Of a stretch of DNA of 64,000 nt, positions 808-63,235 are shown one piece after another. The stretch lies in IMG/VR virus record IMGVR_UViG_3300044712_001937, positions 186,001-250,000 of that record; one strand, 5' to 3'. Made by a program: the position numbers and the translations under genes. Under the pieces are notes generated by a model. It did no database searches. It was not told where the DNA came from and was given only the letters and a program-made list of their open reading frames with translations. Each line of letters starts with the position of its first letter. The first letter of the stretch is position 1.

Positions 808-833
808 GTAACAATTTATTCTTACTCTCGTAT
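808..833 (+). promoter_or_regulatory. ECF-sigma-like promoter GTAACA-N14-TCGTAT (first of 19 copies)
   Basis: Bipartite motif with invariant 14-nt spacing, found upstream of gene starts. Confidence 0.75.
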
Positions 834-858
834 CATACACTAACCAATAAATATTATT

Positions 859-1668
859 ATGAAACATAAAAATACAATTCCAGAACCTAATATTAATGAA
901 GTTAATACAAACTGGTCAACTCCCTCATTGTCATTATTTTCTGCTATTAACAGTTTAAGAAAAGCTTTAAGTAGCGGCTATAAAGCACAATTAATCAGAA
1001 TGGTAAATGAAGATTGTGCTTATCCTATACTCGAAGACATTAAGAAATTAAAACAAGATTTCCGGGAATATACTGGTAATGGTGCATATATGCAAACCCG
1101 TGAAGATATCCTCAACAATACATCATACTCCGATTTTGAAAAACATCTCATGCTTAACTATAATACAGTTTTTGGTACAAGAGAAGCTATGCTTGAATAT
1201 TACCAAACTGGTAAACTTTCTAAAGATAACTTCTTTGGAGCTGGTATTTCACATCTGGTTAAAGTATCAGATATGGTTGAGTATTTAAAAGCAAACAATC
1301 AAGACGGTTCTGAAACTGAACGTATTGATATATTTACCAAACAATATCTAACTCTGGAAACCTCTGGTAAAAAACAATGGTACGATAATGTTAAACCTAT
1401 CAATGCCAGAAATAATCGTGTACCAAAGAAATTTAACCATAAGGTTTGGGTGGTACAAATATTGAACGAGAAACAGGGTAAACCTAATATCCCACTATAC
1501 CAAAGGTTTTTAATTAAAACGTTCAATATGGTTTTATACCCACTAAAATTCATACCTGTTAAATCGGTACTTAGAATGAATGAGTATAGTAATTATACCT
1601 TTCGAATTGGAGATGTGGTTAATGGTTTCTCTGTTGAGTTCCAGATACCAAAGAAATTTAAGTTTTAA
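859..1668 (+). CDS. Hypothetical protein
   Basis: 269-aa ORF directly behind the promoter motif. Confidence 0.8.
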   Translation: MKHKNTIPEPNINEVNTNWSTPSLSLFSAINSLRKALSSGYKAQLIRMVNEDCAYPILEDIKKLKQDFREYTGNGAYMQTREDILNNTSYSDFEKHLMLNYNTVFGTREAMLEYYQTGKLSKDNFFGAGISHLVKVSDMVEYLKANNQDGSETERIDIFTKQYLTLETSGKKQWYDNVKPINARNNRVPKKFNHKVWVVQILNEKQGKPNIPLYQRFLIKTFNMVLYPLKFIPVKSVLRMNEYSNYTFRIGDVVNGFSVEFQIPKKFKF

Positions 1669-1686
1669 ATATAAATCATTGTATAT

Positions 1687-1920
1687 ATGAATAATCAAAA
1701 AGTTAAAACAATTGCTGCTAATTCAGCAGCAATGTTAGAATTAGAATTACAAGAACTAATTAATAATAACTGCAATATAATAGCTGTAGTTCCAGCAATA
1801 TCTTCAATAGGTAGGTATAATTCATCTAATGGATATTCAGATTCAATTTATGTTGTAGTCTACGAAACTAAACCTTCCGTTAGTGTTTTACCTAATGGTG
1901 GTACTATTGTACAAATATAA
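1687..1920 (+). CDS. Hypothetical protein
   Basis: ORF in co-oriented run. Confidence 0.6.
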   Translation: MNNQKVKTIAANSAAMLELELQELINNNCNIIAVVPAISSIGRYNSSNGYSDSIYVVVYETKPSVSVLPNGGTIVQI

Positions 1921-2023
1921 AATATTAACAAAAATACTTAATTTGCTTTATAGTTTTGATTTTTTATCTAAGGATTTTTTGTATATTGAAAGTAAAATCA
2001 ATCTTTAACTTAATAATATTAAG

Positions 2024-2240
2024 ATGACAATAGAAGAATGTAAAAATAGAAGATGCTGCTAAATTAGCTCAGAAAGAATCTAAACAATATCCATCATTAA
2101 ATTGTCAAGCATCTTATAACTTAGGATTGTATGATGGCTTTATTATAGGTGCTAAATCCCAAGCAGCTAAAGAATATTGGTATGAACAATTTAAACAAGA
2201 TAATATCAAAGTCATTGAAGCAATTCAGGATATGAGCTAA
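2024..2240 (+). pseudogene. Frameshifted small ORF (extra A in A5 run)
   Basis: MTIEECK continues as IEDAAKLAQ...KEYWYEQFK if one A is removed at 2042-2046. Confidence 0.55.
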
Positions 2241-3138
2241 AAATATATAAAATTTGAATTTTAGATGATGATGAGAACGTTCTATTCTCGTAAGTCCTAC
2301 TTAGGGCGATAACAGTCATTGTTTAATATTTATTGGTTGTACCCATCCAAAGCTGCGATAGCTCGGATGGGTTTTCTTATTTAAAACCATTAGCAATGTT
2401 CGATTTGTATTGTCCAGTTTATTTTATTATTTACTGGACAAATATTCTCATACAAGTTTTAATTAAAAACATTCTCAGAGGTTTCACCTACCATACAATT
2501 GTACAGATTTTAATTAAAAACTATTCGTAATGATTGCTTTGCTAATAGTTTGTTTTATTTAAGATTTGTATTCGAGAATTTAAGTATTGTAATACCTAAA
2601 TACCTATTAGGAATGTCCTATATTTAGAACGATTCTAAATTACCATTGTACAGCTATTTATATTCATTCTAAATTATAAAATTTTATAAAATCAAGTTTG
2701 GTAAAAATTTTTATATGACTCGGTGTTCGACGTGGGGGCACTACGTTATTACATTTATTTTAGATTATTTTATCCATTATAGAAGATTTTAACCAATACT
2801 GACTAATATAATAGCTATTATAGGAGATTTTACCCTGAATATTAATTTTATCATTACTAATATTCACATTTTGTAATGTACAGGGTATAACTTACTGAAA
2901 ATAAACGCACATATTAAACCCACTATAGGTACAGTTTTCAACAGATTTTAATAGTTATAGTACATATAAAGTTGTATTTAAGTATTCAATTACCTAAATA
3001 GATAAATTCGAATAATAAAAGAGTATTAGAATAACTATATTACTTGTTATTTTATTCATATGTAATGTACGTGTTTTTATCTGTAACAAATATAATCTTT
3101 TCTCGTATCTAATATTGTAAATAATAAAAACTTTAAAT

Positions 3139-3351
3139 ATGGATATAATAATAGGAATGATTGAGTTTATATTAGTAGTAGTAACATTTATATTGACAAT
3201 ATTTACATTAATTAATCTGTATGATTTATTGTTAAATGATAAGTTAAATCCTGAACAGTTTAAAAGGTTAAGGATTAGAGTTATTTACTGGATATTATTA
3301 ACTATTCTGGTATGGTATTTACTTATAAAACTGTTTAAATATACAAGTTAA
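3139..3351 (+). CDS. Small membrane protein
   Basis: Two hydrophobic segments; behind promoter motif at 3083. Confidence 0.65.
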   Translation: MDIIIGMIEFILVVVTFILTIFTLINLYDLLLNDKLNPEQFKRLRIRVIYWILLTILVWYLLIKLFKYTS

Positions 3352-3663: not shown

Positions 3664-3682
3664 AATTTAGCTTGCAATTGTT

Positions 3683-5570: not shown

Positions 5571-5733
5571 CTTACATTAATTTAGTTTTAAATTGAAACA
5601 AATGTAAATTGAAATATTTTATTATCCAAATAAATTATTAAAATATTTTCATGAAAATTATAATATGATTAATATATGTTAGTAACATTAGATTATTAAT
5701 TTCGTATATAAAACAAACAAAATAATATCAACC

Positions 5734-6189
5734 ATGAAAGATTTAATTATCCAAGCTTTAGACTCAGCGTTTCTCAAACTTGAAAGTCAAGTTCCATTAA
5801 ATAAAAAGAAATTTAAGTCTCTTAGTATTATGGATGTTAAACCTACAGAATTAGCTTCATTTATGTTAGATAATAACATTCCTGATACTGCTTATTTTGA
5901 TGGCAATGATAATGGTAATGATGGTTGGGATGATATTCTATTAACATGGGAAATATATGTTCCTACAAATGAAGATGATAATTTAAAGTTTAAGAAAAAT
6001 AGGTTTACGGATATTGCTTGGAGATTTATATATAAATTATTAATAACAAGTGGTTATAAGAGGGTTGGTTATAATACTGGTTTATTAAAGGAATTTAATG
6101 ATACTACTGTATATGATATGTATATCAATAAAGATTTTGATAGGCTTGTTAGGTATTACTCGTTAGCATTTGTTAAAATAGGTAAATAA
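5734..6189 (+). CDS. Hypothetical protein
   Basis: Behind promoter motif at 5682. Confidence 0.75.
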   Translation: MKDLIIQALDSAFLKLESQVPLNKKKFKSLSIMDVKPTELASFMLDNNIPDTAYFDGNDNGNDGWDDILLTWEIYVPTNEDDNLKFKKNRFTDIAWRFIYKLLITSGYKRVGYNTGLLKEFNDTTVYDMYINKDFDRLVRYYSLAFVKIGK

Positions 6190-8378: not shown

Positions 8379-8445
8379 CTTCGTAACATTAGTATTCTAT
8401 TTTCGTATTCTATATTACGAACATAAACTTAAAATCTATATCTGC

Positions 8446-9438
8446 ATGAAACTTCTCGAAATCATTGAAAACTTAAAATCCGGTAAGCTTAAACTTAAAG
8501 ATGGGATTGGTCATTGTTTTAATCCTATTGAGGGTGATATTAAAAGGTTTTATGATTGGATATTAAAGTGTAAAGAGAAAAATGATACTATAGTTGAAAA
8601 AGCATTTTGTTCTATTTATACAGCTATTCTTGAAAAGGATTATCAGCATGGTGAAGTTTTTTGTGAATATGGTAATGATGGTTTATACTGTTTTGATTGT
8701 GGTAAACACTATCATCCTTATCTTATTGATGATTCAACATTAGGATTGATAGATACTCATGAGTATTACAGGTTAATAAAAGAGAATAATTACAATGAAA
8801 TTGTTTTAACTGATGCTAACTATAATATTAATTCCATTTGCCCTATATATGTCGATAAGCAGAAGGGTTATTTGACTTCTGAGATTGATATAACTTCCGG
8901 TGATTTAGTATTTAAAAACTATTTCAGTAAGGAGAAAATATATGAATTTCCTAAAAATGTTAAATATCATTCTGAGAATAGTATTAATGGAATACAAGGT
9001 AGAAAGAATTTAATGCAATATTTATCTACGTTGAATATTGGTTACGGACAAATGGGAAATATGAGTGTTTCTATATTCGTTAATAAGGATGGTTCTGAAA
9101 TCATAATTGGTAGGGATTATTCCTATAATGAAACTGATGGCGAGTTTGAAGTTAAGCACAAAGGATTTAAGAACATTGGCAAAATAAGTTTAGAGGTTTG
9201 GCGATGGATGTGTGGCGATGCCGATGTATTAAAATCAAATAAAGAACCAATGTCCAAGGAATTGAAATCTCTTATTAATAATCCTAAACAGGTTTATGGT
9301 TCTGATTATAAAGAAGAGATTGTTGCAAAGGTTAAAGCTGGAAGATGGGTTATTGAGCATTATTATGACTTCCAGACTAAAAGGGAGTTAATTTACAGTA
9401 GAATGTACTTGAAGAAAAATAATACCAATGTACAGTAA
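8446..9438 (+). CDS. Hypothetical protein
   Basis: 330-aa ORF behind promoter motif at 8383. Confidence 0.85.
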   Translation: MKLLEIIENLKSGKLKLKDGIGHCFNPIEGDIKRFYDWILKCKEKNDTIVEKAFCSIYTAILEKDYQHGEVFCEYGNDGLYCFDCGKHYHPYLIDDSTLGLIDTHEYYRLIKENNYNEIVLTDANYNINSICPIYVDKQKGYLTSEIDITSGDLVFKNYFSKEKIYEFPKNVKYHSENSINGIQGRKNLMQYLSTLNIGYGQMGNMSVSIFVNKDGSEIIIGRDYSYNETDGEFEVKHKGFKNIGKISLEVWRWMCGDADVLKSNKEPMSKELKSLINNPKQVYGSDYKEEIVAKVKAGRWVIEHYYDFQTKRELIYSRMYLKKNNTNVQ

Positions 9439-10228: not shown

Positions 10229-10444
10229 ATGACAATAAATAATGTTAATATTGGAGATAAATTCAAAATATATCCATCTTCAACTAAGATTGCTGAGGTT
10301 GTTGATTTTTATGAAATTAAAAGTCTTACAACCAATGAAGTTGTTGGTTATAAATGCATGGTAAGAGGTGTTGATACATTAGCAACCAATGTACATGAAG
10401 TTCCATTTGCTACAGTTGTTAGGAACAGGATTATTAATAAATAA
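10229..10444 (+). CDS. Hypothetical protein
   Basis: ORF ending the + block. Confidence 0.65.
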   Translation: MTINNVNIGDKFKIYPSSTKIAEVVDFYEIKSLTTNEVVGYKCMVRGVDTLATNVHEVPFATVVRNRIINK

Positions 10445-10500
10445 AGATAATTAATGTACAGATTTACAGTTTGGTAATGTACGTTAATTAAAGCCAAGCT

Positions 10501-14973: not shown

Positions 14974-15191
14974 AGTAAGTTATTTTTAGCAAATGTATTT
15001 TATATTATTCAATATTGCAAGAATAAAAATAAAAATAAATTAATGTGAATAATTTATTTTTAAAAATAGTTTAAATTATTTTTGGAGATATGAAATATTT
15101 TATTTAGTTTTGTTTTGTCCTATGAAAAAAGATTAGAAGAATGTTTAACTCGTTAAAGTGGCTGTTGGATACAGCTACACCTTAAGTTTTA

Positions 15192-15789: not shown

Positions 15790-15843
15790 ATTTGTTTTTT
15801 ATTCTCAATTTATTTAGTTTTGGTGTTTTAATTAATATTAATT

Positions 15844-17043
15844 ATGGATAATAAATTTTCTATTGATTATATAAAAACTCATAGAGTTGCAATATTTGTG
15901 ACAAGTTCAGAAGAAGTTAAAATATGCGATAAGTTATTGGGTTGGAGACATTATTATTATTACGATAATTTTCAATATAAAAAGCATTGTATTTCTGAAA
16001 CTCAGAATGGAAGTGAAGAGGTTTATATTAGAGATAAATATGAAATAATAAACGCCAGAGATTTCATTGAGTATAATAGTGGAATTATAAATATGAGAGA
16101 AAATAGTATTAAAACTGAAATAACTGTTATGAAAGAAGATACTAAAGAATTAATAGGTTATAAATTAAAATATCCTGAATATATTAAAGCAATTTCTGAA
16201 ATAATAGGATTTGCCTTTAACCGTGAAGGATTTGAAACTAACATTGGAAAATTTCAAACTACTTTATTTAAATTAAAAGAAGCAAGTGTCATAGATATTT
16301 GGTTTGAGCCAATCTATATAGAAAAAAAATTCGAAATCGGTCAATGGGTGTATTGGAGTGGTGTAAATCCTACATTTGGTAGGATTGTAAGTTATTCTTC
16401 ATCAATAAAGAATGATGCATATTATTTTGAATTGGATAATACAGTAAATGATAATAATTTATATAGGTCTCCCAATTTAGCAAGTTTAAGACTTGCAAGT
16501 GAGAATGAAATAAAACTACATTTAATTCACCTATTTGAAGAAAAGGGTTATAAAGGAAATAAATTTAAAGTATTAGTTGATAAATATAAAAATGAAATTT
16601 CAACATATAATATTCCAAATAATAAATTAAAGTTTATATATTATTATGATTCTGATGAATTTAAAGTTTCATGGGATAATAGTATTACATATACAATTTA
16701 TTTAAAAGGTGTATGGGCAGAAATTGTTAAAGATGATTATATATCATGTTATTTTGGAGAAGTTGAGTTTAAATTATATAAAGGAAACAATCTTGCTATA
16801 ACTGAACATGGTCGTATTCCTATGGTTGACATTAAGAAAGCTATAGATTATATTGAGAATCCACCAAAATTGGCAGAGTATGTATTAAGTATTCATTCCG
16901 ATAAATTTAGTGGGTATATTAAATTTCATGATATTGATAAAAATGAAATTATTTCTATAGGGTTTGGTTGTAAGAAAGGTAAGTTAAGTGAATTAAAATT
17001 GATATATGAAGCATATTGTAAATTAAATGATATTGATAATTAA
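15844..17043 (+). CDS. Hypothetical protein, paralog of 6481
   Basis: Shared motifs. Confidence 0.85.
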   Translation: MDNKFSIDYIKTHRVAIFVTSSEEVKICDKLLGWRHYYYYDNFQYKKHCISETQNGSEEVYIRDKYEIINARDFIEYNSGIINMRENSIKTEITVMKEDTKELIGYKLKYPEYIKAISEIIGFAFNREGFETNIGKFQTTLFKLKEASVIDIWFEPIYIEKKFEIGQWVYWSGVNPTFGRIVSYSSSIKNDAYYFELDNTVNDNNLYRSPNLASLRLASENEIKLHLIHLFEEKGYKGNKFKVLVDKYKNEISTYNIPNNKLKFIYYYDSDEFKVSWDNSITYTIYLKGVWAEIVKDDYISCYFGEVEFKLYKGNNLAITEHGRIPMVDIKKAIDYIENPPKLAEYVLSIHSDKFSGYIKFHDIDKNEIISIGFGCKKGKLSELKLIYEAYCKLNDIDN

Positions 17044-17048
17044 TAATT

Positions 17049-17252
17049 ATGAACAATTCTAATGCAGTTGGTAAAATTATAATCATTAAAGATTTGAATT
17101 TTAGTGATTATATGAAGGATAAAGATGGAAACATCAAAACATATGATAGTGTTGAGCAAGCTGATTTAGAGTGTGGCATGTATGAATTTCCGGATGTGTT
17201 GATATGTCAAATTGTTTCTAATCATGTAGAGGAAGATATTGAAACAATTTAA
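17049..17252 (+). CDS. Hypothetical protein
   Basis: ORF in run. Confidence 0.65.
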   Translation: MNNSNAVGKIIIIKDLNFSDYMKDKDGNIKTYDSVEQADLECGMYEFPDVLICQIVSNHVEEDIETI

Positions 17253-17451
17253 ATAAATTCTCGTATTAAAACACATTAAAACTTCATAATATGAATTGGT
17301 ATAAAACATTAGATATTCACACCAGAATTAATCTTAAAGATTTAAGCTATTTGATTTGTGGAATGAAATTTACTGATATGCTTTTAATCTTTACTTTAAG
17401 TGAAGCTATTGAAATACTTCATAATAAACTAATTATAGAAGGATTTAATGT

Positions 17452-17760
17452 ATGAAAAGTTTTAGAAAAGATTATTTTGGTTCAATTCATAATGATGAAA
17501 TTATAATAGCTTTTAATCCAAATCCGCAATTAGTAACATTGGAGGATTTGGAAGATTTAACAAAGCGTTATCTTTATAAAGAAGGTGATAAAATTGTAAC
17601 TCCTTTTGGAATTGAAACAATTAAAGAAATTAATAAAAATTATGGAATACAATACGGGTATGAATGGTTAATAACTGTTGAAGAAAATGAAAATCAATAT
17701 AAACCTTGCGAATTAATTGGGATTTATGTTAAAACAATTAAATTGGAGATTTTTAATTAA
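17452..17760 (+). CDS. Hypothetical protein
   Basis: ORF in run. Confidence 0.7.
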   Translation: MKSFRKDYFGSIHNDEIIIAFNPNPQLVTLEDLEDLTKRYLYKEGDKIVTPFGIETIKEINKNYGIQYGYEWLITVEENENQYKPCELIGIYVKTIKLEIFN

Positions 17761-17826
17761 AAACCTTATTTGTAACAAAATTAGGTTGTTTACGTATTGA
17801 TACATAATCAATAAAAATTAATCAAA

Positions 17827-18645
17827 ATGGCAAAAAAGACTAATATAAAACAAGCTAAAATTAATCCTAAATTAACTCCGGAACTGCATAAATCTATGTT
17901 GCTTATGCGTGATTTGGCTGATATGGAGAAAAAGGTTGCAGCAGGTTTAATTCCCACAAATCCAACACGTATATTTAAGGTTGATGAACGTATTCAGTTT
18001 GGTGCGCATAAAGAAACATATATTCGTGAGGTATATGATAATGGATTATACTATAAAATTGAGAGTTTAAACGTTCAACGTGAAAGGAATAATCCACCTC
18101 AGAATGAATTTCATATTATTGAGTGGGTGAGTTTATTTCCAATTAAATTTGAACCCACTAATTTCACTAAAATTGAGGAATATAGGATAAGGCAATATAA
18201 TTCAAGCATTGATTCGTTATTATCAATGGTTTACCATTCCGGAGTTGACTTCGATGTTGAATATCAACGTGAACATGTTTGGAAACTGGAAGATAAAATA
18301 AATTTAATTGATTCTATATTCAATAATATTGAGATTGGTATGTTTGTATTTGTGGAAAGAGAATATCCATATACTAAACGTCTTGAAATTATCGATGGTA
18401 AACAGAGATTAACTGCAATTCATGAATTTTATGAAGATAGATTTCAATATAAAGGATATTATTTTTCGCAATTATCCAATCCAGATAAGAATAAATTTAC
18501 AAGTCATGGTATTGCTTATGGTCAATTGGAAAATCCTACAAGGAAGGCTATTTTGGAGACCTTCATTAAAATGAATACTTGTGGAAAACCAATGGAAAAT
18601 AAACATATTGAAAATGTAAAGGAATTGTTAAAAACTGTTGAATAA
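17827..18645 (+). CDS. DUF262 (GmrSD N-terminal / ParB-like) protein
   Basis: YQREHVW...LIDSIFNNIEIG...IIDGKQRL...FIKMN. Confidence 0.85.
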   Translation: MAKKTNIKQAKINPKLTPELHKSMLLMRDLADMEKKVAAGLIPTNPTRIFKVDERIQFGAHKETYIREVYDNGLYYKIESLNVQRERNNPPQNEFHIIEWVSLFPIKFEPTNFTKIEEYRIRQYNSSIDSLLSMVYHSGVDFDVEYQREHVWKLEDKINLIDSIFNNIEIGMFVFVEREYPYTKRLEIIDGKQRLTAIHEFYEDRFQYKGYYFSQLSNPDKNKFTSHGIAYGQLENPTRKAILETFIKMNTCGKPMENKHIENVKELLKTVE

Positions 18646-18666
18646 TATTAATTTTTAATTAAAATT

Positions 18667-19047
18667 ATGAAAAGTGTTTGTGACTCATGTGGACATCAAA
18701 ACGAAGAAATTTGTAATACTTGTGAATTGATTAAGAAAGAATTAATTGATTTCAGATATAAAATAGATTCGGATAATATAACTTTATATGGTGCAGGTAA
18801 ATTCCATGAAGAAAAATTGGTTTTGGATAAAACGAAATCCAGTTTATTATTTATTGAATTATGGAAGTTTCTTAATATAGGTAAAGGAGAAAAGAACTAT
18901 TCGAAAAAAGAAATGGAACAGAATTTAATCTATTGTGTTTCTGAAATTGCAGCTAAATTAGGACATGCAAAAACATCGGAAGAAATGAAAGTCTGGAATG
19001 ATGAAACTCACAAATGGATTGATGAGAATTTAAATAATTTGGAGTAG
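18667..19047 (+). CDS. Hypothetical protein
   Basis: ORF in run. Confidence 0.7.
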   Translation: MKSVCDSCGHQNEEICNTCELIKKELIDFRYKIDSDNITLYGAGKFHEEKLVLDKTKSSLLFIELWKFLNIGKGEKNYSKKEMEQNLIYCVSEIAAKLGHAKTSEEMKVWNDETHKWIDENLNNLE

Positions 19048-19067
19048 TTAAATTACTCCACCGATAT

Positions 19068-19103
19068 AAAAACCCATGTAACATTATATGGGTTTTTTCG
19101 TAT
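19068..19103 (+). promoter_or_regulatory. Hairpin/terminator fused to promoter motif; related copies at 22444, 22963, 39411
   Basis: AAAACCCATGTAACATTATATGGGTTTTTTCGTAT. Confidence 0.75.
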
Positions 19104-19360
19104 ATAGATATATAACCAATAAAATTAAGCATATGGCAAAAAGTAAAGAATTTGAAGCTAAATATAAAGCAGAAGGTTTACGCAGAAGCCATATTCGTAA
19201 AGAAGAACGTATTGCCGAACGTAAACGTAAATTATATCAATACGGTAAAAGTTCTGATGGTCGATGTCCTGAGTGTGGTGGTCAAATGACTTGGTGTTCT
19301 GGCTGTCAGGTATGGAGTCGTACTTGTTGTGAAAAATATGGAACATGTATGTGTAATTAA
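19088..19360 (+). CDS. Small Cys-rich Zn-finger protein (start probably 19132)
   Basis: CPECGG...CSGC...CCEKYGTCMC. Confidence 0.65.
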   Translation: MGFFVYRYITNKIKHMAKSKEFEAKYKAEGLRRSHIRKEERIAERKRKLYQYGKSSDGRCPECGGQMTWCSGCQVWSRTCCEKYGTCMCN

Positions 19361-19601
19361 AAATATAATTATGGAAAGTGTAGGTCAATTTATTTATGGT
19401 AACGAAGTTTATTTACCTTTAGATTCTGTAAAAATTGGTGATTTATTCTTCACAGATTTTGAAGATAAAATTGCTGTTTATAAAAAAACAAAAAAAGGTA
19501 AGAAATTAATAAAAATTGTAGAAAATTATGGTGAGTTATATAAAATTGAAAACATTAATATTGAACCACCAGTATCAAATTTCATATTGTTAAACCCTTA
19601 A
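19329..19601 (+). CDS. Hypothetical protein
   Basis: ORF in run. Confidence 0.6.
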   Translation: MKNMEHVCVIKNIIMESVGQFIYGNEVYLPLDSVKIGDLFFTDFEDKIAVYKKTKKGKKLIKIVENYGELYKIENINIEPPVSNFILLNP

Positions 19602-19648
19602 ATTTATGTATATTTGTAACAATACATAAATTTATTCGTATATTACAT

Positions 19649-19706
19649 TGCGATTTAGCTCAGTGGTAGAGCCGAGGTGTCAGGAGTTCGATTCTCTTAG
19701 TCGCAA
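19649..19706 (+). tRNA. tRNA-like RNA lacking the whole anticodon arm
   Basis: Acceptor TGCGATT/AGTCGCA; D-arm GCTC-AGTGGTA-GAGC; only 9 nt CGAGGTGTC; T-arm AGGAG-TTCGATT-CTCTT. Confidence 0.8.
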
Positions 19707-19734
19707 CTAAAAACTAATCTTAAATAAAAAATAT

Positions 19735-20028
19735 ATGGCAAAGACTAATTGGAGTGAATGTGAAAGGGATGATTTAAATCAAATTCCTGTTGCATTAGAA
19801 AAAGGTTGGTTACCAGATTTTAACTATAAAGATAAAATGCAAGGTAGAATTACTCCTGAGAATTGTCCTCATGAAACTGTAAGTTTTTTTAAAAATGAAA
19901 AACATACATGGAAAGGATATAATCGAAATACTGGTGAAAGTTATTGGATTGTTGCCGATTTAATACATATGCGTTTCACCAATCATCGCCAGTATGATAC
20001 ATTGGAGTTAGTATTTGAAAACGAATAA
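19735..20028 (+). CDS. Hypothetical protein
   Basis: ORF in run. Confidence 0.7.
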   Translation: MAKTNWSECERDDLNQIPVALEKGWLPDFNYKDKMQGRITPENCPHETVSFFKNEKHTWKGYNRNTGESYWIVADLIHMRFTNHRQYDTLELVFENE

Positions 20029-20037
20029 AATTAAAAT

Positions 20038-20388
20038 ATGAAAACAAAACTTATTAAATGGTTAATTTCACTATTACAACCAAAATTTACTGTTGAGCAA
20101 ATCAAAAGAATCAATACTGCAAAAAATTTGTTCGAAATGTATTTTAACGGATTTGAAGATGAAGTTGAACCACAAAGTAATTTGTCTACATTTAGTTTAG
20201 GTATTACTAACTTTGAATTTGAATTCAAATCAAATTTATTGGTAATGACTGTAACATTACTTAGACCGGGATTATTAATTGGAAAACGTGGTTCAACTAT
20301 AGAAGGTTTAACAAAATACTTAACTTCCGAAAATGAACCAGTTGAGATTAAAATAAAAGAATCTAAACTTTGGAATAGTATAAAATAA
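20038..20388 (+). CDS. KH-domain protein (ribosomal protein S3-like KH)
   Basis: TLLRPGLLIGKRGSTIEGLTKYL carries the GxxG loop. Confidence 0.75.
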   Translation: MKTKLIKWLISLLQPKFTVEQIKRINTAKNLFEMYFNGFEDEVEPQSNLSTFSLGITNFEFEFKSNLLVMTVTLLRPGLLIGKRGSTIEGLTKYLTSENEPVEIKIKESKLWNSIK

Positions 20389-20405
20389 CAATAATACTTA
20401 TAACA

Positions 20406-20633
20406 ATGGGAATTTTATCAATTCAAGCAAAGTGTTCAGATATGTGTCATATATCATTCTCAGATAAAAATACTGGAATTGATATAGAGCATCAAGGTTA
20501 TGTTCCAAAAGGTATAGGTATTGGTGGTGGTGATATGATTAGACTGCAAATTGATACTGTAACTGGTAAAGTTTTATCAGCAGGTTTAATGACTGATGCT
20601 GATATAATTGAAGCAATTGAAAACGAAAAATAA
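20406..20633 (+). CDS. Hypothetical protein
   Basis: ORF in run. Confidence 0.7.
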   Translation: MGILSIQAKCSDMCHISFSDKNTGIDIEHQGYVPKGIGIGGGDMIRLQIDTVTGKVLSAGLMTDADIIEAIENEK

Positions 20634-20757
20634 AAATTATGAAAACAATATTAATTTACATTTTCAGTAATTTTGGAATAACATTAGCATTGTTTTTATT
20701 AATAATTCGTTTATTTTCAGAATTTTTTAAACTAAAAAATAACTAATAACATATTAT

Positions 20758-21407: not shown

Positions 21408-21604
21408 ATAAATTTGCAGATAATGATAATTGGAGTAATTGGATTGGTTTAAGAATCATCAAACATTCCAAGAAACCATTTAAAAATGGCAAGCAAGTCA
21501 ATATTGCAGTTTCAATGAAAACTAATCCAAATTCGAATAAAATGGGTTTTGAAGTTGAAGATGGTTCTATTGTCGATTGCCATCAATGTAAACTTTTTAA
21601 TTAA
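21395..21604 (+). CDS. Hypothetical protein
   Basis: ORF in run. Confidence 0.65.
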   Translation: MEKLDKFADNDNWSNWIGLRIIKHSKKPFKNGKQVNIAVSMKTNPNSNKMGFEVEDGSIVDCHQCKLFN

Positions 21605-22400: not shown

Positions 22401-22506
22401 ACGTTAACTTCCGTAGATTTGGAGAGGTCTATTGATTTTAATTAAACCCATGTAACATTGCATGGGTTTTTTCGTATATAGATGCATAATCAATAAATTT
22501 TAAACT

Positions 22507-22860: not shown

Positions 22861-23026
22861 GTTGTGAAATTTAAAATTATTCATATTTTTGTATTTACTA
22901 TTTGTTAAGAATATGTAAACAGTTTAACCAGAACTGGCATATTCACCAATGAAGATTGGACGAAACCCGTGTAACATTACATGGGTTTTTTCGTATATAG
23001 ATGTATAACCAATAAAAATTAAAATA

Positions 23027-24202: not shown

Positions 24203-24253
24203 AATCATGTAACATAATACATTTTATTTCGTATATAATTAAAAATAAATAAT

Positions 24254-24556: not shown

Positions 24557-24569
24557 AATTAATAAATTT

Positions 24570-24860: not shown

Positions 24861-24864
24861 TAAA

Positions 24865-29752: not shown

Positions 29753-29935
29753 ATGGAAACTATTACACTTTTAATCATTTTTGGACTTAAAACTTGGTCT
29801 ATAATCTACTCATTAATGTTACTATTCATAATAATAGTTCGTATTTGGAATAAAGATTTTAATTTTAATATAGAGTATAAAGAAAGTTTTATTTTTACTT
29901 TTTATTTTATGTCACTATATGCATGGACTTTGTAA
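29753..29935 (+). CDS. Small membrane protein
   Basis: Hydrophobic ORF. Confidence 0.55.
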   Translation: METITLLIIFGLKTWSIIYSLMLLFIIIVRIWNKDFNFNIEYKESFIFTFYFMSLYAWTL

Positions 29936-29981
29936 CATTTTATATTTAATCTCGTATATTAAATAAAATATAATTTAGGAT

Positions 29982-35525: not shown

Positions 35526-35633
35526 ACTTATTAAATTTATTAATAAATACTTAATTTATTATAAAATATATTGATATATGTAACTAAAATTTTTTAATTT
35601 CGTATATTTACCTGAAATTAAATCATTATTTAT

Positions 35634-37156: not shown

Positions 37157-37260
37157 TAGATTTTACATAGATAAACTACAAATACTCGATTATCTATTCA
37201 TAATTTGCAACAATTTCATTTGAAATTCGTAATTCAACAAAACATTAAAACAATTTCAAT

Positions 37261-40341: not shown

Positions 40342-40411
40342 ATTTTTATTTGCAACAATTTATTACATTTGTCGTATTATTGATTACTATAACCAATAAA
40401 AATAAAGTAGT

Positions 40412-42697: not shown

Positions 42698-42757
42698 GTA
42701 ACAAATTCAAATTAATATCGTATATTTACGCAAAACAAAATAACTAAATATAAAATT

Positions 42758-44570: not shown

Positions 44571-44915
44571 TTGCAACATATATTCATAAATTTCGTACTT
44601 AAATATGTAAAAATTAGGAAAAATATGAAAAACGCCAATATTTATCGTAAAGAATTAAGTGAAATTAAAGCTAAAGAAATTGCTTTAAAAAATAGTATAG
44701 GTAAAAGACTTTATACTTTAGCTCTTAATTATCCGGATGCTATTGTAAGTAAAGTTGGTGATACTCCAATTAAAGCTAAAAGAATTGCATCAGCATTTTA
44801 TATTGAATCAATTGAATTATCAGCACAGATTGATTGTATTGAACGAATTGAAAAATATATTGAAAGTATTTCTCCAGTAAAGCAGCTTGAAATTAATTGG
44901 GAAAACATAAAATAA
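44571..44915 (+). CDS. Hypothetical protein (start probably 44625)
   Basis: Behind promoter motif at 44573. Confidence 0.65.
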   Translation: MQHIFINFVLKYVKIRKNMKNANIYRKELSEIKAKEIALKNSIGKRLYTLALNYPDAIVSKVGDTPIKAKRIASAFYIESIELSAQIDCIERIEKYIESISPVKQLEINWENIK

Positions 44916-48469: not shown

Positions 48470-48663
48470 ATTGCTTTTTTTAATTAACCAAATTTATGAC
48501 AAATAAATATGCAAGTCAAGTAAAATTTGAAAAATATGATATATGAAAGAAAATTCATAATTAATAAATTATTACCTATAATTGTAATAATATAATTTAT
48601 TACATATTATCATAATAAACTAAATTTAATACAGCAGAATAAACTAATTTTAATACAAAAAAT

Positions 48664-56654: not shown

Positions 56655-56987
56655 TTATTCAACTTTTTTAATTATTATATTCATATTTGGTTTAAATACA
56701 TCAATATTTTTTCCAGTTGCACCGAATGTTGAATTCTCAGCAATTCTTCTTGAGATAATATTTGCACTAAGATTTTTTTGAAATTCGTTAAACCAATATT
56801 CCTTAACACTTTCATCTTTAGTTGCAAAATCAATTAATAAACTGTTAAGTTCAATGACACCACCTTCATTGGCATGAACTAAACCAACTACATTACATTT
56901 TTTTATAAAATCATTTGCAGCTTTTTTCATAATATTAATTATATTGGTTTTTATATACGAATTCAAAATCAGGCATTTCAACTCCAT
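56655..56987 (-). CDS. Hypothetical protein
   Basis: ORF in - block; start may be internal. Confidence 0.55.
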   Translation of the reverse strand: MELKCLILNSYIKTNIINIMKKAANDFIKKCNVVGLVHANEGGVIELNSLLIDFATKDESVKEYWFNEFQKNLSANIISRRIAENSTFGATGKNIDVFKPNMNIIIKKVE

Positions 56988-57510
56988 TATTTACATAATA
57001 AAGATATGCTGCTTTATATATACAAATATCACTTATCCATGAAAGATTTTCAATTTCAGCAGGAGTATTTTTAGTAATTTTTAACGGAGATTCGTTTGTA
57101 GTATTACAACTATAATTATGTTTTTGTTTAGTTCGATATGTTTCATCAATCAAATGAAAATCTTTTTTATGATATCCAAATGCCCAAGCCATATCATATT
57201 TTTTTTCAAATACTGCCACATCCCAGAACTTTTTCTTTTCTTCTTCAGTATTACCTTTAACTATCTTTCCAGTTCCATTAGTCCAATCAATAAAATCTTC
57301 TCTACTAAACCAACCAAAATTAAAACATTTTTGATTATTTGGATTTAACCAATAATATGCAATACCATCTTTTTCAATTGATTTCTCCAATTTATTCATT
57401 GGAGAACAAATTGAATTTGCTTTTATTAATTGCTCAATAGTAGGTTCAGGAACAAATGTAGATACACCTTTAGCGACATTAGAAAATATTGATTTAAAAT
57501 AGTTTTTCAT
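56935..57510 (-). CDS. Hypothetical protein
   Basis: Behind minus-strand promoter motif at 57529-57554. Confidence 0.75.
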   Translation of the reverse strand: MKNYFKSIFSNVAKGVSTFVPEPTIEQLIKANSICSPMNKLEKSIEKDGIAYYWLNPNNQKCFNFGWFSREDFIDWTNGTGKIVKGNTEEEKKKFWDVAVFEKKYDMAWAFGYHKKDFHLIDETYRTKQKHNYSCNTTNESPLKITKNTPAEIENLSWISDICIYKAAYLYYVNNGVEMPDFEFVYKNQYN

Positions 57511-57540
57511 TTGATTTATTTTTCAAATATACGATAATTA

Positions 57541-58311
57541 TTAAGTTTTGTTACTTTTTTGGTAATATTCTTTTACAGCATCCGACATAGCGAATTCTAT
57601 ACAAATATTTATATAAAATCTGCGCATTAATGGACTCCAATGTTTATGTGATTTAACATATTGAATAGCTGCGACTTCTATTGGATTATCAATATTGATA
57701 ATTTTAATTCCTCTTCCTTTTTCAGGAATAGTGCATGTAAGTTCATCATGTAGTGAACGTAATAATTCCTCAACATGACCTTCTTCTCTGGTATGTCTTA
57801 AAAATCTATATTCAACATAAATTTCATCAACGGGATTTTCAACCCAAGTTTTTAGAAACTCAACCGAAAATGTTGGAAAGTTTTCATAAATAGGCATACC
57901 AGAAATATCTTCATATCCATGAAATTTATCAAGTTCAGGATATGAACCAATTATTTTATTACAAAAAGCTAATGGAAATTTTTCATCATATATACTAATT
58001 TTATTAGTACGATTAGATATATAGTAATCACCTTTTTTAATTTCTTCATCAGAGAGTAATACTAATTGATAACATGATAAATCCCATTTATTATAAACTG
58101 CATTTTTTAAAAAAATATCATTAGCAATTACATATGAAGATGGTTTAAATTTACCTGTAGGTTTACTATTCCAAACACTTTCCTGATTATATGTAGGGTC
58201 ATTAGCATCTTTTAACCATGTTTCATATTCTTCTTCCATATAATTACAAATATCGCCAACTTTAGCATCTCTATTAAGTTTAATAATTGCTAATTTATGC
58301 TTTTTATACAT
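57541..58311 (-). CDS. Hypothetical protein
   Basis: 256-aa ORF. Confidence 0.8.
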   Translation of the reverse strand: MYKKHKLAIIKLNRDAKVGDICNYMEEEYETWLKDANDPTYNQESVWNSKPTGKFKPSSYVIANDIFLKNAVYNKWDLSCYQLVLLSDEEIKKGDYYISNRTNKISIYDEKFPLAFCNKIIGSYPELDKFHGYEDISGMPIYENFPTFSVEFLKTWVENPVDEIYVEYRFLRHTREEGHVEELLRSLHDELTCTIPEKGRGIKIINIDNPIEVAAIQYVKSHKHWSPLMRRFYINICIEFAMSDAVKEYYQKSNKT

Positions 58312-59610: not shown

Positions 59611-59716
59611 GATAAATATTTTTTACATAAATACACAAAATTTTTAAAAATATCTTCAAAGTTATTTTTTTATTAAAAAGTATTATTTGCACTACTATTC
59701 ACATATATTTTTAATT

Positions 59717-60469: not shown

Positions 60470-60519
60470 AAATTATTTTTAAGTAGACAAATATATAATT
60501 TTGTAATTAAAAAACAAAA

Positions 60520-61017: not shown

Positions 61018-61022
61018 GACTT

Positions 61023-61949
61023 TTAGTTATATAAATTACTATTAAGAATATATTTTAACACATCTGGAGTTATGTAATGAAGCAATTCTTTATCAATTGA
61101 TTCAATTTCAAAACTTTTATCATTAAAAGTAATTTTATTTATAGTATCATTACGTTCTTTAAGCAAGTCTCTAACCTGAGTAGAAGATGATTCCATGATG
61201 GTAGATTCTGCGGTAAGATAAATATGAGGATATTTAAAATACCACGCATTTTGAAGAGGCTGGTAACCTTTTCTTGGAACTATAACCATTCGTATCATTC
61301 TTTCGAGTTCTTCAAAATTTACCCATGTATCGAATGAATTTGCATTATCTAATCCAACAACAAGAGAAAAATTATAACGTTCGTTTAATTCTTTCTCCAT
61401 TTTTAACTTTTTAATCATATAATATGATTCGCCTTTTAATTTATGCTGAATTTCATAATCAAATATTTTAATTCTCGCATCAACTTTTGCTGCAAGTTTA
61501 CACATTTCCAAACGGTGTTCTGGACTTTCCATTATTTTTCCGTTCATATGTTCATATGCCGGAACAAGCCAAACTTCATCAAATTCGCCACTGGTATTCA
61601 ATATAAATTGTGCTGCCTGAATATGACCTATTGTTATTGGGTTGAAAGCACCACCATATAATGCAACTTTAGTTTTTCGACCTAATGATAAATATTGTTG
61701 TCTTCTGCTTTCAATTTTCTCTAAAGTTCTACCAATTAATTCAGCAGCATCCCAACCATTTTCATTACATAACTGTAATAGTGATGCTAAGATATCTCCG
61801 GTTTCTTCTTTAAGATTAATTACATCTTGCCATTTCATGAGTTCAAAGAATTCACCTTGAATATCTTTTAAACGTTCTTTTAATGGAGTATAACCAAAAT
61901 GTTCTGTGAACACATCATTTACAACTTTTTGAATTTTATTTATTTCCAT
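61023..61949 (-). CDS. nadD: MazG-like pyrophosphatase fused to nicotinate/nicotinamide-nucleotide adenylyltransferase
   Basis: N-terminal DIQGEFFEL...LKEETGDILA; C-terminal YGGAFNPITIGH, WLVPAYEH, VVGLDNA, SSTQVR. Confidence 0.85.
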   Translation of the reverse strand: MEINKIQKVVNDVFTEHFGYTPLKERLKDIQGEFFELMKWQDVINLKEETGDILASLLQLCNENGWDAAELIGRTLEKIESRRQQYLSLGRKTKVALYGGAFNPITIGHIQAAQFILNTSGEFDEVWLVPAYEHMNGKIMESPEHRLEMCKLAAKVDARIKIFDYEIQHKLKGESYYMIKKLKMEKELNERYNFSLVVGLDNANSFDTWVNFEELERMIRMVIVPRKGYQPLQNAWYFKYPHIYLTAESTIMESSSTQVRDLLKERNDTINKITFNDKSFEIESIDKELLHYITPDVLKYILNSNLYN

Positions 61950-62355
61950 AAGTTATTTTAGTTAAATTATTATCAATTTCAACAATTTTATCTTGTAATA
62001 GTTTTCGATTCTCAATTTCAAAAATTGAATCATCTTTAGATTCTTTAATGAATGTTTTTATTTCTCTCCAGAATAATCTTCGAATTCTTAATTGTTCTAA
62101 ATCGAAATTATCTTTAGGTTTAGTTCCAGATTTTAAGCAACCCTTATCATTATTATTTGATAGTGGACAATCAGTATAGTTACAATTATTATTTTCTTTA
62201 TCGAAATAAGGTTTACACATTTGACAATTTAAAGAAAATATAGTAATACCATAATCATCTCTTAATTTTTTAGAATTTAAATTAAGAGAAATAATATCAT
62301 TAAACTGATTAATAATATTATTACAATATTCTAATATTTTATCTTTTTCAGACAT
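61936..62355 (-). CDS. Cys-rich hypothetical protein
   Basis: CQMC...CxxxxCPL...GC. Confidence 0.7.
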   Translation of the reverse strand: MSEKDKILEYCNNIINQFNDIISLNLNSKKLRDDYGITIFSLNCQMCKPYFDKENNNCNYTDCPLSNNNDKGCLKSGTKPKDNFDLEQLRIRRLFWREIKTFIKESKDDSIFEIENRKLLQDKIVEIDNNLTKITYGNK

Positions 62356-62357
62356 AA

Positions 62358-62567
62358 TTATTTATTCATAAATCGTTTTACAATTTCCACGTCAATAAGA
62401 CTATTTATACGAAGTGCTCTTGTAAATTCTGTACCAATTTGTGGATTTTCAGTAAGTATATAGTTACCTAATTTATATGGTAAATCACCATATTTTTTAC
62501 AGGCAATATTATTCTTTATTGAACGTAGTTCATCATCAGTATAAAATTTTATATCTTCGCTTTTCAT
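62358..62567 (-). CDS. Hypothetical protein
   Basis: ORF in - block. Confidence 0.6.
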   Translation of the reverse strand: MKSEDIKFYTDDELRSIKNNIACKKYGDLPYKLGNYILTENPQIGTEFTRALRINSLIDVEIVKRFMNK

Positions 62568-63166
62568 TGAATTTTATGTATTAATGAATTTATTAACCCA
62601 AATGTGCTACCAATTAAATGTTTATCTTCATTAGTTAATGACTTAAATTCAGGATTTTTAATTAAAAGTTGAAGATTATCTTTAAATGGAATTAATGATT
62701 TTATATTTTCAATCCAAACCGGATTAAGAAGAATATCAATATTTCTATCTTCTTTCCATCTGAATATTTTGAATTCAGAAAGATTAGCTTTTCCAATTTC
62801 CCATTCACCATATTCAAAAACACTTCTTAATAAATTACCATTACCTTCCAACATCCATTTGCAAGATTTAACAGCACCCCAATGATTTGAATATCGAAAT
62901 ACATCACCATTTTCAGTAATTGCATATTCACTACCACTCGGACTTTTATGTTGGTAAATTAAATTTTGTTTCATAACACCAAAATCCCATGTTTCATGAA
63001 TATTATCGTGAGTATTTTCAATTTTTTTGAAATCAACACTCGTACAAATATGAAAGTTTGAAGTGTTAATTGTAGTATTAAGCTCACGAAAATGTATATA
63101 TCGGATATTTTCAAGCTCATTAATGAGCTTTAAATTTTCTTCAATATGTTCTTTAGGTATCATCAT
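62564..63166 (-). CDS. Hypothetical protein
   Basis: Behind promoter motif at 63187-63212. Confidence 0.8.
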   Translation of the reverse strand: MMIPKEHIEENLKLINELENIRYIHFRELNTTINTSNFHICTSVDFKKIENTHDNIHETWDFGVMKQNLIYQHKSPSGSEYAITENGDVFRYSNHWGAVKSCKWMLEGNGNLLRSVFEYGEWEIGKANLSEFKIFRWKEDRNIDILLNPVWIENIKSLIPFKDNLQLLIKNPEFKSLTNEDKHLIGSTFGLINSLIHKIQ

Positions 63167-63235
63167 TATAATTCATTTTTTATAAGATACGATAAATCAT
63201 TCAATATGTTACAAAAAAACCCACTAATTAGTGGG

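What the first reader, a model, noticed from the sequence alone, without database searches (positions are those of the whole stretch)
808..63212. Nineteen copies of an ECF-sigma-like promoter with invariant spacing
Seen in sequence: G(T/C/A)AAC(A/T)-N14-(T/A)CGTA at + strand 808, 3083, 5682, 8383, 17241, 17772, 19078, 19616, 22452, 22971, 24209, 29932, 35580, 37207, 40352, 42698 and 44573, and on the - strand at 57529-57554 and 63187-63212. All are at or near gene starts, in the sense direction and with exactly 14 nt between boxes. Established: AAC-N16-CGT(A) is the classic ECF sigma consensus, as in B. subtilis SigW/SigX. Separate TAnnTTTG host promoters also occur. Inference: this is a second temporal regulon run by a phage-encoded or hijacked host ECF sigma.
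Basis: partly seen in the sequence, partly recalled or inferred. Interest (0 to 1): 0.65.

Follow-up and report, generated by a model that had tools for sequence, protein, structure and literature searches.

The report
Phage ECF-sigma promoter regulon
A 365-kb uncultivated giant phage carries about 65 copies of a textbook ECF-sigma promoter in front of its non-structural genes, along with its own ECF sigma factor genes, so it most likely redirects the host RNA polymerase with a self-encoded sigma.

Summary
All 19 sites exist (chance expectation 0.12), plus one variant site at 610-634. The window is bases 186001-250000 of a complete 364.7-kb virus record from rhizosphere metagenomes. Genome-wide, G[ACT]AAC-N16-CGTA occurs 64 times; every other spacing from 8 to 25 gives 0-4. 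Of the 64 sites, 57 are intergenic, 60 face the downstream gene and 51 have an ORF start 7-41 nt downstream.

The motif precedes rIIA, rIIB, a helicase, NAMPT, many small ORFs and tRNA clusters. It does not precede virion genes, which use a separate late motif, GTATTTAT. A third, Bacteroidota-type host promoter class (TTG..TAnnTTTG) is also present.

The phage encodes two ECF sigma factors, both outside the window. In nine related phage lineages, a sigma-1 homologue sits at the head of a same-strand array of the same motif. Upstream of rIIA only the two boxes are conserved. Sigma-1's closest solved relative is B. subtilis SigW, whose promoter is TGAAAC-N16-CGTA.

The sigma is phage-encoded, probably sigma-1, though sigma-2 is not excluded. 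No RNA data exist, so start sites and timing are untested. This is a new member of a known kind: a phage sigma-driven temporal class.

The parts
610..634 (+).
   Evidence: PWM scan, score 19.2; sequence; downstream element conserved in 4 phages
808..832 (+). ECF-type promoter; ORF 859-1668 (269 aa) starts 26 nt downstream
3083..3107 (+). ECF-type promoter; ORF 3139-3351 (70 aa) starts 31 nt downstream
5682..5706 (+). ECF-type promoter; ORF 5734-6189 (151 aa) starts 27 nt downstream
8383..8407 (+). ECF-type promoter; ORF 8446-9438 (330 aa) starts 38 nt downstream
17241..17265 (+). ECF-type promoter (GAAACA -35 box); small ORF (54 aa) starts 25 nt downstream
17772..17796 (+). ECF-type promoter; ORF 17827-18645 (272 aa, GmrSD_N-like domain) starts 30 nt downstream
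19078..19102 (+). ECF-type promoter; its -35 box sits in the loop of a hairpin (19068-19097) and the T-run forms the spacer; ORF starts 30 nt downstream
19616..19640 (+). ECF-type promoter 8 nt upstream of a 58-nt tRNA-like gene (19649-19706)
22452..22476 (+). ECF-type promoter fused to an intrinsic terminator hairpin (22444-22469); ORF 22507-22860 starts 30 nt downstream
22971..22995 (+). ECF-type promoter fused to a terminator-like hairpin (22962-22989); ORF 23027-24202 (391 aa) starts 31 nt downstream
24209..24233 (+). ECF-type promoter; ORF 24254-24556 (100 aa) starts 20 nt downstream
29932..29956 (+). ECF-type promoter; ORF 29982-30275 (97 aa) starts 25 nt downstream
35580..35604 (+). ECF-type promoter; ORF 35634-36017 (127 aa) starts 29 nt downstream
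37207..37231 (+). ECF-type promoter (GCAACA); ORF 37261-37449 (62 aa) starts 29 nt downstream
40352..40376 (+). ECF-type promoter of rIIA (40412-42697, 761 aa); both boxes invariant in five phages while the spacer and flanks diverge
42698..42722 (+). ECF-type promoter of rIIB (42758-43948, 396 aa)
44573..44597 (+). ECF-type promoter (GCAACA); ORF of 96 codons starts 27 nt downstream
57530..57554 (-). ECF-type promoter; ORF 56935-57510 (191 aa) starts 19 nt downstream
63188..63212 (-). ECF-type promoter; ORF 62564-63166 (200 aa) starts 21 nt downstream
19649..19706 (+). tRNA-like RNA gene transcribed from the 19616 promoter; it has acceptor, D and T arms but no anticodon arm
   Evidence: Rfam tRNA 43.2 bits over the whole model in 58 nt; fold; not called by ARAGORN

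Best explanation
The motif tGTAACA-N14-TCGTAt (AAC-N16-CGTA) is the -35/-10 pair of a phage-specific promoter class. The host core RNA polymerase reads it when loaded with a phage-encoded ECF (group 4) sigma factor.

The most likely factor is 'sigma-1', at G000 174270-174938. That is 11 kb upstream of the window and at the head of the densest promoter array. Sigma-1 itself is probably made from a host-type promoter. It then switches on about 65-70 transcription units, many of them short, which carry the non-structural programme: rIIA/rIIB, a helicase, NAMPT, small takeover-type ORFs, tRNA clusters and small RNAs.

Virion genes are left to a separate late promoter class, GTATTTAT. In several units the -35 box lies in the loop of the preceding gene's terminator hairpin and the T-run forms the spacer, so termination and re-initiation are fused into one roughly 40-nt cassette.

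Shown: the motif's statistics, position, orientation and conservation; the sigma genes; and the linkage between sigma genes and promoter arrays.
For: - **Enrichment in the window:** 19 sites against 0.12 expected.
- **Enrichment in the genome:** 64 sites at N16 against 0-4 at every other spacing. A PWM scan gives 66-73 sites against 1-6 in reversed sequence.
- **Position and orientation:** 57 of 64 sites are intergenic where 10.9% of the genome is (P about 3e-47). 51 of 64 have an ORF start 7-41 nt downstream, and 60 of 64 are on the strand of the downstream gene.
- **A single class:** of 177 intergenic G[TCA]AAC boxes, 55 have CGTA at exactly N16 and nothing else stands out.
- **Two ECF sigma genes in the phage:** sigma-1 scores TIGR02937 93.9 bits, Sigma70_r2 50.6 and r4_2 42.1. 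Sigma-2 scores TIGR02937 67.9 bits. No RNAP beta or beta' was found.
- **Conservation in close relatives:** four relatives with rIIA only 49-54% identical carry 20-35 copies each, against 0-2 in controls. Upstream of rIIA only the two boxes are invariant.
- **Linkage to sigma-1:** in nine lineages whose sigma-1 homologue is 34-48% identical (G000, G002, G003, G005-G008, L051/52, L053), the motif array starts within about 0.6-2.6 kb downstream of the sigma gene on the same strand. Whole-record counts are 41-70 against 1-17 in controls. A jumbo phage with only a 25%-identical sigma shows no enrichment, 7 against 6.
- **Closest solved relative:** B. subtilis SigW (62.8 bits, with a near-identical region 4.2 helix). 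SigW promoters are TGAAAC..CGTA with a -35-proximal T-tract (PMC5758882), and the same T-tract is seen in these phages.
- **Gene content:** the class drives non-structural genes. Tail sheath and virion proteins carry the other motif.
Against: - There is no transcript evidence. Only DNA runs from rhizosphere metagenomes hold the phage.
- Sigma-2 is also conserved in every relative.
- Sigma-1 linker length does not track the N16 versus N17 preference of the lineages.
- The promoter that first expresses sigma-1 is unclear. An exact host-type -7 box occurs upstream in only 3 of 9 lineages, and degenerate ECF-like boxes occur in others.
- The host is unknown.
Confidence: 0.62

Rival explanations
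1. The same promoter class is read by the second phage ECF sigma (sigma-2, G000 313192-313806, co-transcribed with the primase-like gene). Sigma-1 would then have another small or AT-only regulon.
For: Sigma-2 is present in every motif-bearing relative and is better conserved than sigma-1, at 39-57% identity. Its region 4 helix is almost invariant. The primase/sigma-2 operon has a conserved host-type TATATTTG box 11-13 nt before its ATG in 8 of 9 loci, so sigma-2 should be made early. G004 has 20 motifs and sigma-2 but no detected sigma-1, although that record is only 66% complete.
Against: Sigma-2 is never adjacent to the arrays, whereas sigma-1 always is. Sigma-2 resembles canonical CGTA-reading ECFs less well: 35 bits to SigW against 62.8, and Sigma70_r4_2 below its cut-off. 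It also has a 50-80-residue Ser/Thr/Asn-rich linker that is atypical for a sigma with strictly fixed spacing.
Confidence: 0.2
2. A host ECF sigma, for example an envelope-stress sigma activated by infection, reads the motif, either alone or as the igniting step before the phage sigma takes over.
For: The motif is indistinguishable from a generic bacterial ECF consensus (PMC5758882). Bacteroidetes genomes average about 22 ECFs (PMC7826278). The promoter that first expresses sigma-1 is not clearly of host sigma-A type.
Against: The phage and all its relatives carry their own ECF sigmas, physically linked to the arrays. The preferred spacing switches between N16 and N17 among phage lineages, which is easier to explain by a co-evolving phage factor. 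The host is unidentified, so no host ECF sigma with this specificity could be looked for.
Confidence: 0.07
3. The two boxes are bound by a non-sigma phage transcription factor (MotA-like sigma appropriation, or an activator/repressor), and the true -10 lies elsewhere.
For: Many spacers carry a lineage-specific palindrome: TTTTTAATTAAAAA in G000, L051 and G006, and TTTAGGATATCCTAAA in G008. These look like operators for a dimeric protein.
Against: The palindrome occurs in only a subset of sites, whereas the two asymmetric boxes are in all of them. The box sequences, the spacing and the distance to start codons all match ECF promoters. No host-type -7 element accompanies most sites.
Confidence: 0.05
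4. The motif is not a promoter. It is a repeated terminator, 5'-UTR or recombination element spread by duplication.
For: Some copies sit in terminator hairpins, and a few neighbouring copies are near-identical.
Against: Most spacers and flanks are unrelated in sequence. The boxes alone are conserved at orthologous positions across phages about 50% diverged. Only 7 of 64 sites are terminator-like (hairpin of -5 kcal/mol or better plus a T-run).
Confidence: 0.03

Closest known systems
B. subtilis SigW/SigX/SigM-type ECF promoters (TGAAAC-N16-CGTA; -35-proximal T-tract)
   Same: It has the same two boxes (AAC and CGTA), the same 16-nt distance and a T-rich stretch just after the -35 box (PMC5758882). 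SigW is the closest solved homologue of sigma-1.
   Different: It is encoded and used by a virus, with about 65 promoters in 365 kb. No anti-sigma partner gene is recognisable next to the sigma gene. The sigma carries a conserved N-terminal extension of about 45 residues that bacterial relatives lack. The host is probably Bacteroidota, not Firmicutes.
Phage-encoded sigma cascades: SPO1 gp28 and gp33/34, phiEco32/7-11 gp36, T4 gp55
   Same: A phage sigma redirects host core RNAP to a phage-specific promoter class that defines a temporal gene set (PMC13401047, PMC8948821, PMC2988021). Jumbo 'group 2' phages lack their own RNAP but encode sigmas (PMC7824862).
   Different: Those sigmas are divergent, and T4 late promoters lack a -35 element. 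Here the sigma and the promoter are canonical ECF. The ECF classification 2.0 explicitly did not capture phage ECFs (PMC7826278). Two ECF sigmas plus a weak gp55-like candidate coexist here.
crAss-like phage 'sigma-W' genes
   Same: These are the nearest sigma-1 relatives among deposited phage genomes, at about 27-34% identity. They also come from phages of Bacteroidota hosts.
   Different: They are only distantly related. No promoter regulon was examined for them here.
Bacteroidota housekeeping sigma-A promoters (TTG / TAnnTTTG)
   Same: They are present in the same genome, with about 41 intergenic matches, including the one in front of the primase/sigma-2 operon.
   Different: They are a different class with different boxes and variable spacing. 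The ECF-type sites generally lack TAnnTTTG.

Membership tests
ECF (group 4 sigma-70) dependent promoter | -35 element containing AAC | tested here: met
   G[T/C/A]AAC[A/T] is invariant in all sites
ECF (group 4 sigma-70) dependent promoter | -10 element containing CGT | tested here: met
   CGTA is invariant, flanked by T on both sides in 46 of 56 sites
ECF (group 4 sigma-70) dependent promoter | Rigid spacer, 16-17 nt between AAC and CGT | tested here: met
   64 hits at N16 against 0-4 at any other spacing. Some sister lineages prefer N17
ECF (group 4 sigma-70) dependent promoter | A cognate ECF sigma available in the same system | tested here: met
   Two phage ECF sigma genes pass the Pfam and TIGR02937 cut-offs
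ECF (group 4 sigma-70) dependent promoter | Transcription start a few nt downstream of the -10 box, dependent on the sigma | not testable with these tools
   No RNA run holds the phage. The only indirect constraint is that the tRNA-like gene starts 8 nt after CGTA
ECF sigma factor (protein, sigma-1) | [quoted passage not shown] | tested here: met
   Sigma70_r2 at residues 87-152 and Sigma70_r4_2 at 195-246 of the 256-aa frame; Sigma70_ECF 32 bits; TIGR02937 93.9 bits against a cut-off of 42.9. The extra N-terminal segment is not a known sigma region
ECF sigma factor (protein, sigma-1) | Co-transcribed anti-sigma factor (common, not universal) | tested here: inconclusive
   The ORF after sigma-1 encodes an 84-aa protein. 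It was not scanned against any family library, so an anti-sigma partner is neither shown nor excluded
Phage sigma-driven temporal promoter class (SPO1/phiEco32/T4 type) | Phage-encoded sigma plus a phage-specific promoter motif limited to a functional subset of genes | tested here: met
   The ECF class precedes rIIA/B, a helicase, NAMPT, small ORFs and tRNAs. The late class precedes tail sheath and virion proteins. The two classes are almost mutually exclusive along the genome
Phage sigma-driven temporal promoter class (SPO1/phiEco32/T4 type) | Time-ordered expression after infection | not testable with these tools
   The phage is uncultivated and no transcriptome exists
Bacteroidota sigma-A promoter | -7 element TAnnTTTG with an upstream TTG | tested here: not met
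   The ECF-type sites have no conserved TAnnTTTG; only a few overlap one by chance or design
E. coli-type sigma-70 promoter | TTGACA-N17-TATAAT enriched | tested here: not met
   68 matches against 61.3 expected in 17000-25000

The most novel reading that the evidence does not exclude
The promoters deliberately mimic a host envelope-stress ECF regulon. Under this reading, the membrane damage of infection activates a host ECF sigma, which fires the first promoters, including the degenerate ECF-like sites in front of sigma-1. The phage's own anti-sigma-free SigW-like sigma then locks the regulon on by feed-forward. The palindromic spacers (TTTTTAATTAAAAA, or TTTAGGATATCCTAAA in a sister lineage) would be operators for a phage repressor that shuts the class off later.
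Probability: 0.12. Interest if true: 0.75.

Novelty: new member of a known kind. Interest (0 to 1): 0.55.

Why it matters
- **An annotation key.** The motif gives a sequence-level key to the transcription programme of a whole clade of uncultivated 290-365-kb phages from soil, rhizosphere and other metagenomes. Three promoter classes can now be read directly from the DNA. These sort hundreds of genes of unknown function into host-dependent, sigma-dependent non-structural and late sets.
- **A gap in the ECF picture.** Canonical ECF sigmas with canonical promoters operate in viruses, a group the current ECF classification left out.
- **Candidate tools.** A family of sigma/promoter pairs with lineage-specific spacing (N16 or N17) could serve as orthogonal expression parts.
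- **Compact design.** The fused terminator-promoter cassettes are an economical way to insulate single-gene units.

Tried and rejected
- **Similarity to deposited phages:** megablast of 8 kb against the deposited phage collection gave no match.
- **RNA evidence:** The look-up of sequencing runs found only four DNA runs from rhizosphere metagenomes and none on record as RNA. Read laying was therefore not used, and start sites could not be mapped.
- **Own RNA polymerase:** Pfam RNAP beta and beta' domains gave no hit.
- **Link to the bS21-encoding Bacteroidetes jumbo phages (PMC9723584):** no S21 gene was found.
- **A second bipartite motif that could belong to the other sigma:** dyad and k-mer enrichment on the 133 remaining upstream regions found only the host-type CTTGCAT/TAnnTTTG promoter. 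No upstream element accompanies the late motif.
- **Alternative -10 variants** (CGTC, CGAC, TGTA) at N16: none enriched.
- **Covariation of sigma-1 linker length with N16 or N17 preference:** none.
- **gp55-type late sigma:** only a weak candidate, phrog_234 at E 0.002-0.003. Direct BLASTP of T4 gp55 against sigma-2 showed nothing.
- **Close bacterial source of sigma-1:** the best genome hits are at most 36% identical and scattered over Acidobacteriota, Cyanobacteria, Tenacibaculum and others.
- **Kin search for a virus record:** No host genome could be tested for the motif.
- **Rfam match for the conserved hairpin RNA:** none meaningful.

Full report
**Context.** The window is bases 186001-250000 of a complete 364,702-bp IMG/VR virus record with direct terminal repeats. 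It has 26% G+C. It encodes 49 tRNAs and a tmRNA. Only rhizosphere metagenomes hold it. Only 4% of its genes have a Shine-Dalgarno-like core, and A is enriched at -13 to -11 and at -3. From my own knowledge, that is the Bacteroidota style of translation initiation. Together with the TAnnTTTG promoters, it points to a Bacteroidota host. No RNAP beta or beta' domain was detected.

**Observation.** Shuffles give 0.12 on average. The minus-strand coordinates are one base inside those given.

Genome-wide there are 56 strict matches against 3 for the reversed control. The looser G[ACT]AAC-N16-CGTA gives 64. Scanning spacings from 8 to 25 nt gives 64 hits at 16 and 0-4 everywhere else, so the 'invariant spacing' claim is very solid.

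The position matrix reads tGTAACA-N14-TCGTAt, with a mild T preference just after the -35 box and an A about 10 nt after CGTA. A PWM scan finds 66-73 sites against 1-6 in reversed sequence. It adds a window site at 610-634 with CCGTA.

**Promoter-like behaviour.**
- 57 of the 64 sites are intergenic, although only 10.9% of the genome is (binomial P about 3e-47).
- 51 sites have an ORF of at least 40 codons starting 7-41 nt downstream, with a median near 29.
- 60 sites are on the strand of the downstream gene.

Most of the sites without an ORF precede RNA genes. These include tRNA clusters at about 104-120 kb, the tRNA-like gene at window 19649 and a conserved hairpin RNA.

**One class only.** Among 177 intergenic G[TCA]AAC boxes, 55 have CGTA at N16 and no other tetramer stands out. 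Among 176 intergenic CGTA boxes, 55 have G[TCA]AAC 16 nt upstream.

**Other promoter classes.** K-mer enrichment revealed a second phage motif, GTATTTAT(A)nnAAA. It lies 22-26 nt before start codons, has no -35 element, and occurs in 71 upstream regions. It precedes the tail sheath, virion and tail-spike proteins and a giant endolysin-domain protein, so it is the late class. It is nearly absent from the window.

A third class is the Bacteroidota-type TTG-N17-21-TAnnTTTG, often with CTTGCAT at -33. It has about 41 intergenic matches, eight of them in the window.

The ECF-type class precedes:
- rIIA and rIIB;
- a GmrSD_N-like protein;
- an SF2 helicase, NAMPT and an AAA_33 kinase;
- many small ORFs of unknown function.

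The three classes occupy largely different genome regions.

**Sigma factors.** The genome encodes two ECF-type sigmas.
- Sigma-1 is at G000 174168/174270-174938, plus strand. It scores TIGR02937 93.9 bits, r2 50.6 and r4_2 42.1.
- Sigma-2 is at G000 313192-313806, minus strand. It scores TIGR02937 67.9 bits, with r4 near the cut-off.

Sigma-1 lies immediately upstream of the densest motif run, which begins at 175322 and continues into the window. A 113-aa ORF at 279624-279965 is a weak gp55-like candidate.

**Comparative evidence.** Four IMG/VR relatives, with rIIA 49-54% identical, carry the motif 20-35 times each against 0-2 in controls. They also carry both sigma genes. The exception is a 66%-complete record that lacks sigma-1. 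An alignment of the five rIIA upstream regions shows TTTG-AACA and CGTA invariant while the spacer and flanks diverge. That is a classic phylogenetic footprint.

The sigma-1 family has about 20 metagenomic members and no close bacterial relative; the best is at most 36% identical. Further contigs and jumbo records with sigma-1 homologues at 34-48% identity all show the same layout. The sigma gene is followed on the same strand by an array of G[TAC]AAC-N16/17-CGTA sites, each about 25-35 nt before a small ORF.

Whole-record counts, against reversed controls:

| Record | Motif count | Control |
|---|---|---|
| G005 | 70 | 4 |
| G006 | 65 | 17 |
| G007 | 41 | 4 |
| G008 | 47 | 1 |
| G009 (only a 25%-identical sigma) | 7 | 6 |

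Some lineages prefer N16 and others N17.

**Which sigma?** The points in favour of sigma-1 are:
- its constant adjacency to the arrays;
- its closest solved homologue, B. subtilis SigW (62.8 bits), with a near-identical region 4.2 helix;
- the SigW promoter, which is TGAAAC..CGTA with a -35-proximal T-tract (PMC5758882).

Sigma-2 matches SigW more weakly, at 35 bits. It has a long low-complexity linker. It always follows a primase-like gene, and that operon carries a conserved terminator plus a TATATTTG box 11-13 nt before its ATG, which makes it an early, host-transcribed operon.

Sigma-2 is not excluded, however. It is in every relative, and I found no motif for it. Linker length in sigma-1 does not track the N16 or N17 preference. 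Upstream of sigma-1 genes, 3 of 9 lineages have an exact TAnnTTTG box and several have degenerate ECF-like boxes. How sigma-1 is first expressed therefore remains open.

**Architecture.** In 7 sites (19078, 22452 and 22971 in the window) the -35 box sits in the loop of a GC-rich hairpin and the following T-run forms the spacer. The independent terminator scan also calls 22444-22469. The same design is frequent in G003, L053 and G006. Other sites carry a lineage-specific palindrome in the spacer.

**Comparison with known systems.** The system works like the phage sigma cascades of SPO1, phiEco32/7-11 and T4 (PMC13401047, PMC8948821, PMC2988021). It also fits the 'group 2' jumbo-phage strategy of using own sigmas with host RNAP (PMC7824862). 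The promoter itself meets every sequence-level criterion of an ECF promoter. Phage ECFs were explicitly not captured by ECF classification 2.0 (PMC7826278). My paper searches found no description of this clade or regulon, but that search is not exhaustive.

**Verdict.** It is a new member of a known kind and of moderate interest.

Noticed in passing
window 35543-35550 (-), 59627-59634 (-); genome-wide in G000: A second phage promoter class, GTATTTAT(A)nnAAA. It has no -35 element and lies 22-26 nt before ATG in 71 upstream regions. It drives the tail sheath, virion proteins and a 1733-aa endolysin-domain protein, so it is the late class. It is almost absent from the window.
   Followed up: yes
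window 5599-5629 (-), 14990-15020 (-), 15792-15822 (+), 48489-48519 (-), 60488-60517 (-): Bacteroidota-type host promoters, TTG-N17-21-TAnnTTTG, often with CTTGCAT as the -33 box. There are about 41 intergenic matches in the genome. A conserved one lies 11-13 nt before the primase/sigma-2 operon in 8 of 9 related loci.
   Followed up: yes
window 19649-19706 (+): A 58-nt tRNA-like gene with acceptor, D and T arms but no anticodon arm. Rfam tRNA scores 43 bits and ARAGORN does not call it. It lies 8 nt after an ECF-type promoter. It could be a decoy or regulatory mini-tRNA.
   Followed up: partly
window ~641-680 (+); G000 ~179040-179080; L051 ~17870-17910; L138 ~10410-10450: A conserved element of about 40 nt, a GC-rich hairpin around a GGGTG..GTAATCC..ACCCT core. 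It sits directly downstream of ECF-type promoters and has no ORF. It is conserved in four diverged phages and has no Rfam match. No covariation is visible with only four copies.
   Followed up: partly
window 19068-19097, 22444-22469, 22962-22989: Fused terminator-promoter cassettes. The -35 box lies in the hairpin loop and the terminator T-run serves as the promoter spacer. The same design is common in sister phages (G003, L053, G006).
   Followed up: yes
G000 175322-183126 (outside the window); L051, L138; G008: Many promoter spacers hold a lineage-specific palindrome: TTTTTAATTAAAAA in G000, L051 and G006, and TTTAGGATATCCTAAA in G008. This could be an operator for a dimeric regulator or a bend-inducing T/A-tract. 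TTTAATTAAA also sits just upstream of the hairpin at window 22452.
   Followed up: no
G000 104111-148110 and 164405-164477 (outside the window); window 33501-33596: The genome has 49 tRNA genes and a tmRNA (111992-112351), including a CUA-anticodon (amber suppressor type) tRNA at 148036-148110. The only ARAGORN tRNA in the window is an odd 96-nt 'tRNA-His' with anticodon atg, which is borderline in Rfam (29.5 bits against a cut-off of 29).
   Followed up: no
G000 174270-174410 (sigma-1 N-terminus, outside the window): Sigma-1 homologues share a conserved extension of about 45 residues (KYNKS..AW...WSD.LK.AWNI.KNG) ahead of region 2. It is absent from bacterial ECFs and from the G001/G002 orthologue. 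It gives weak hits to small PHROGs of unknown function.
   Followed up: partly
G000 279624-279965 (-) (outside the window): A 113-aa ORF whose only PHROG hit is the T4 gp55 late-sigma family (E 0.003). It is a possible minimal late sigma for the GTATTTAT class.
   Followed up: partly
whole genome: Only 4% of genes have a Shine-Dalgarno-like core, and A is enriched at -13 to -11 and -3. A recurrent AACCAATAA leader lies between the ECF-type promoters and the ATG. This is Bacteroidota-style translation initiation.
   Followed up: partly
window 17827-18645 (+); G000 129157-130623: Genes in the ECF class include a GmrSD_N-domain protein and a full NAMPT (NAD salvage). Both are of a kind associated with defence and counter-defence.
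   Followed up: no
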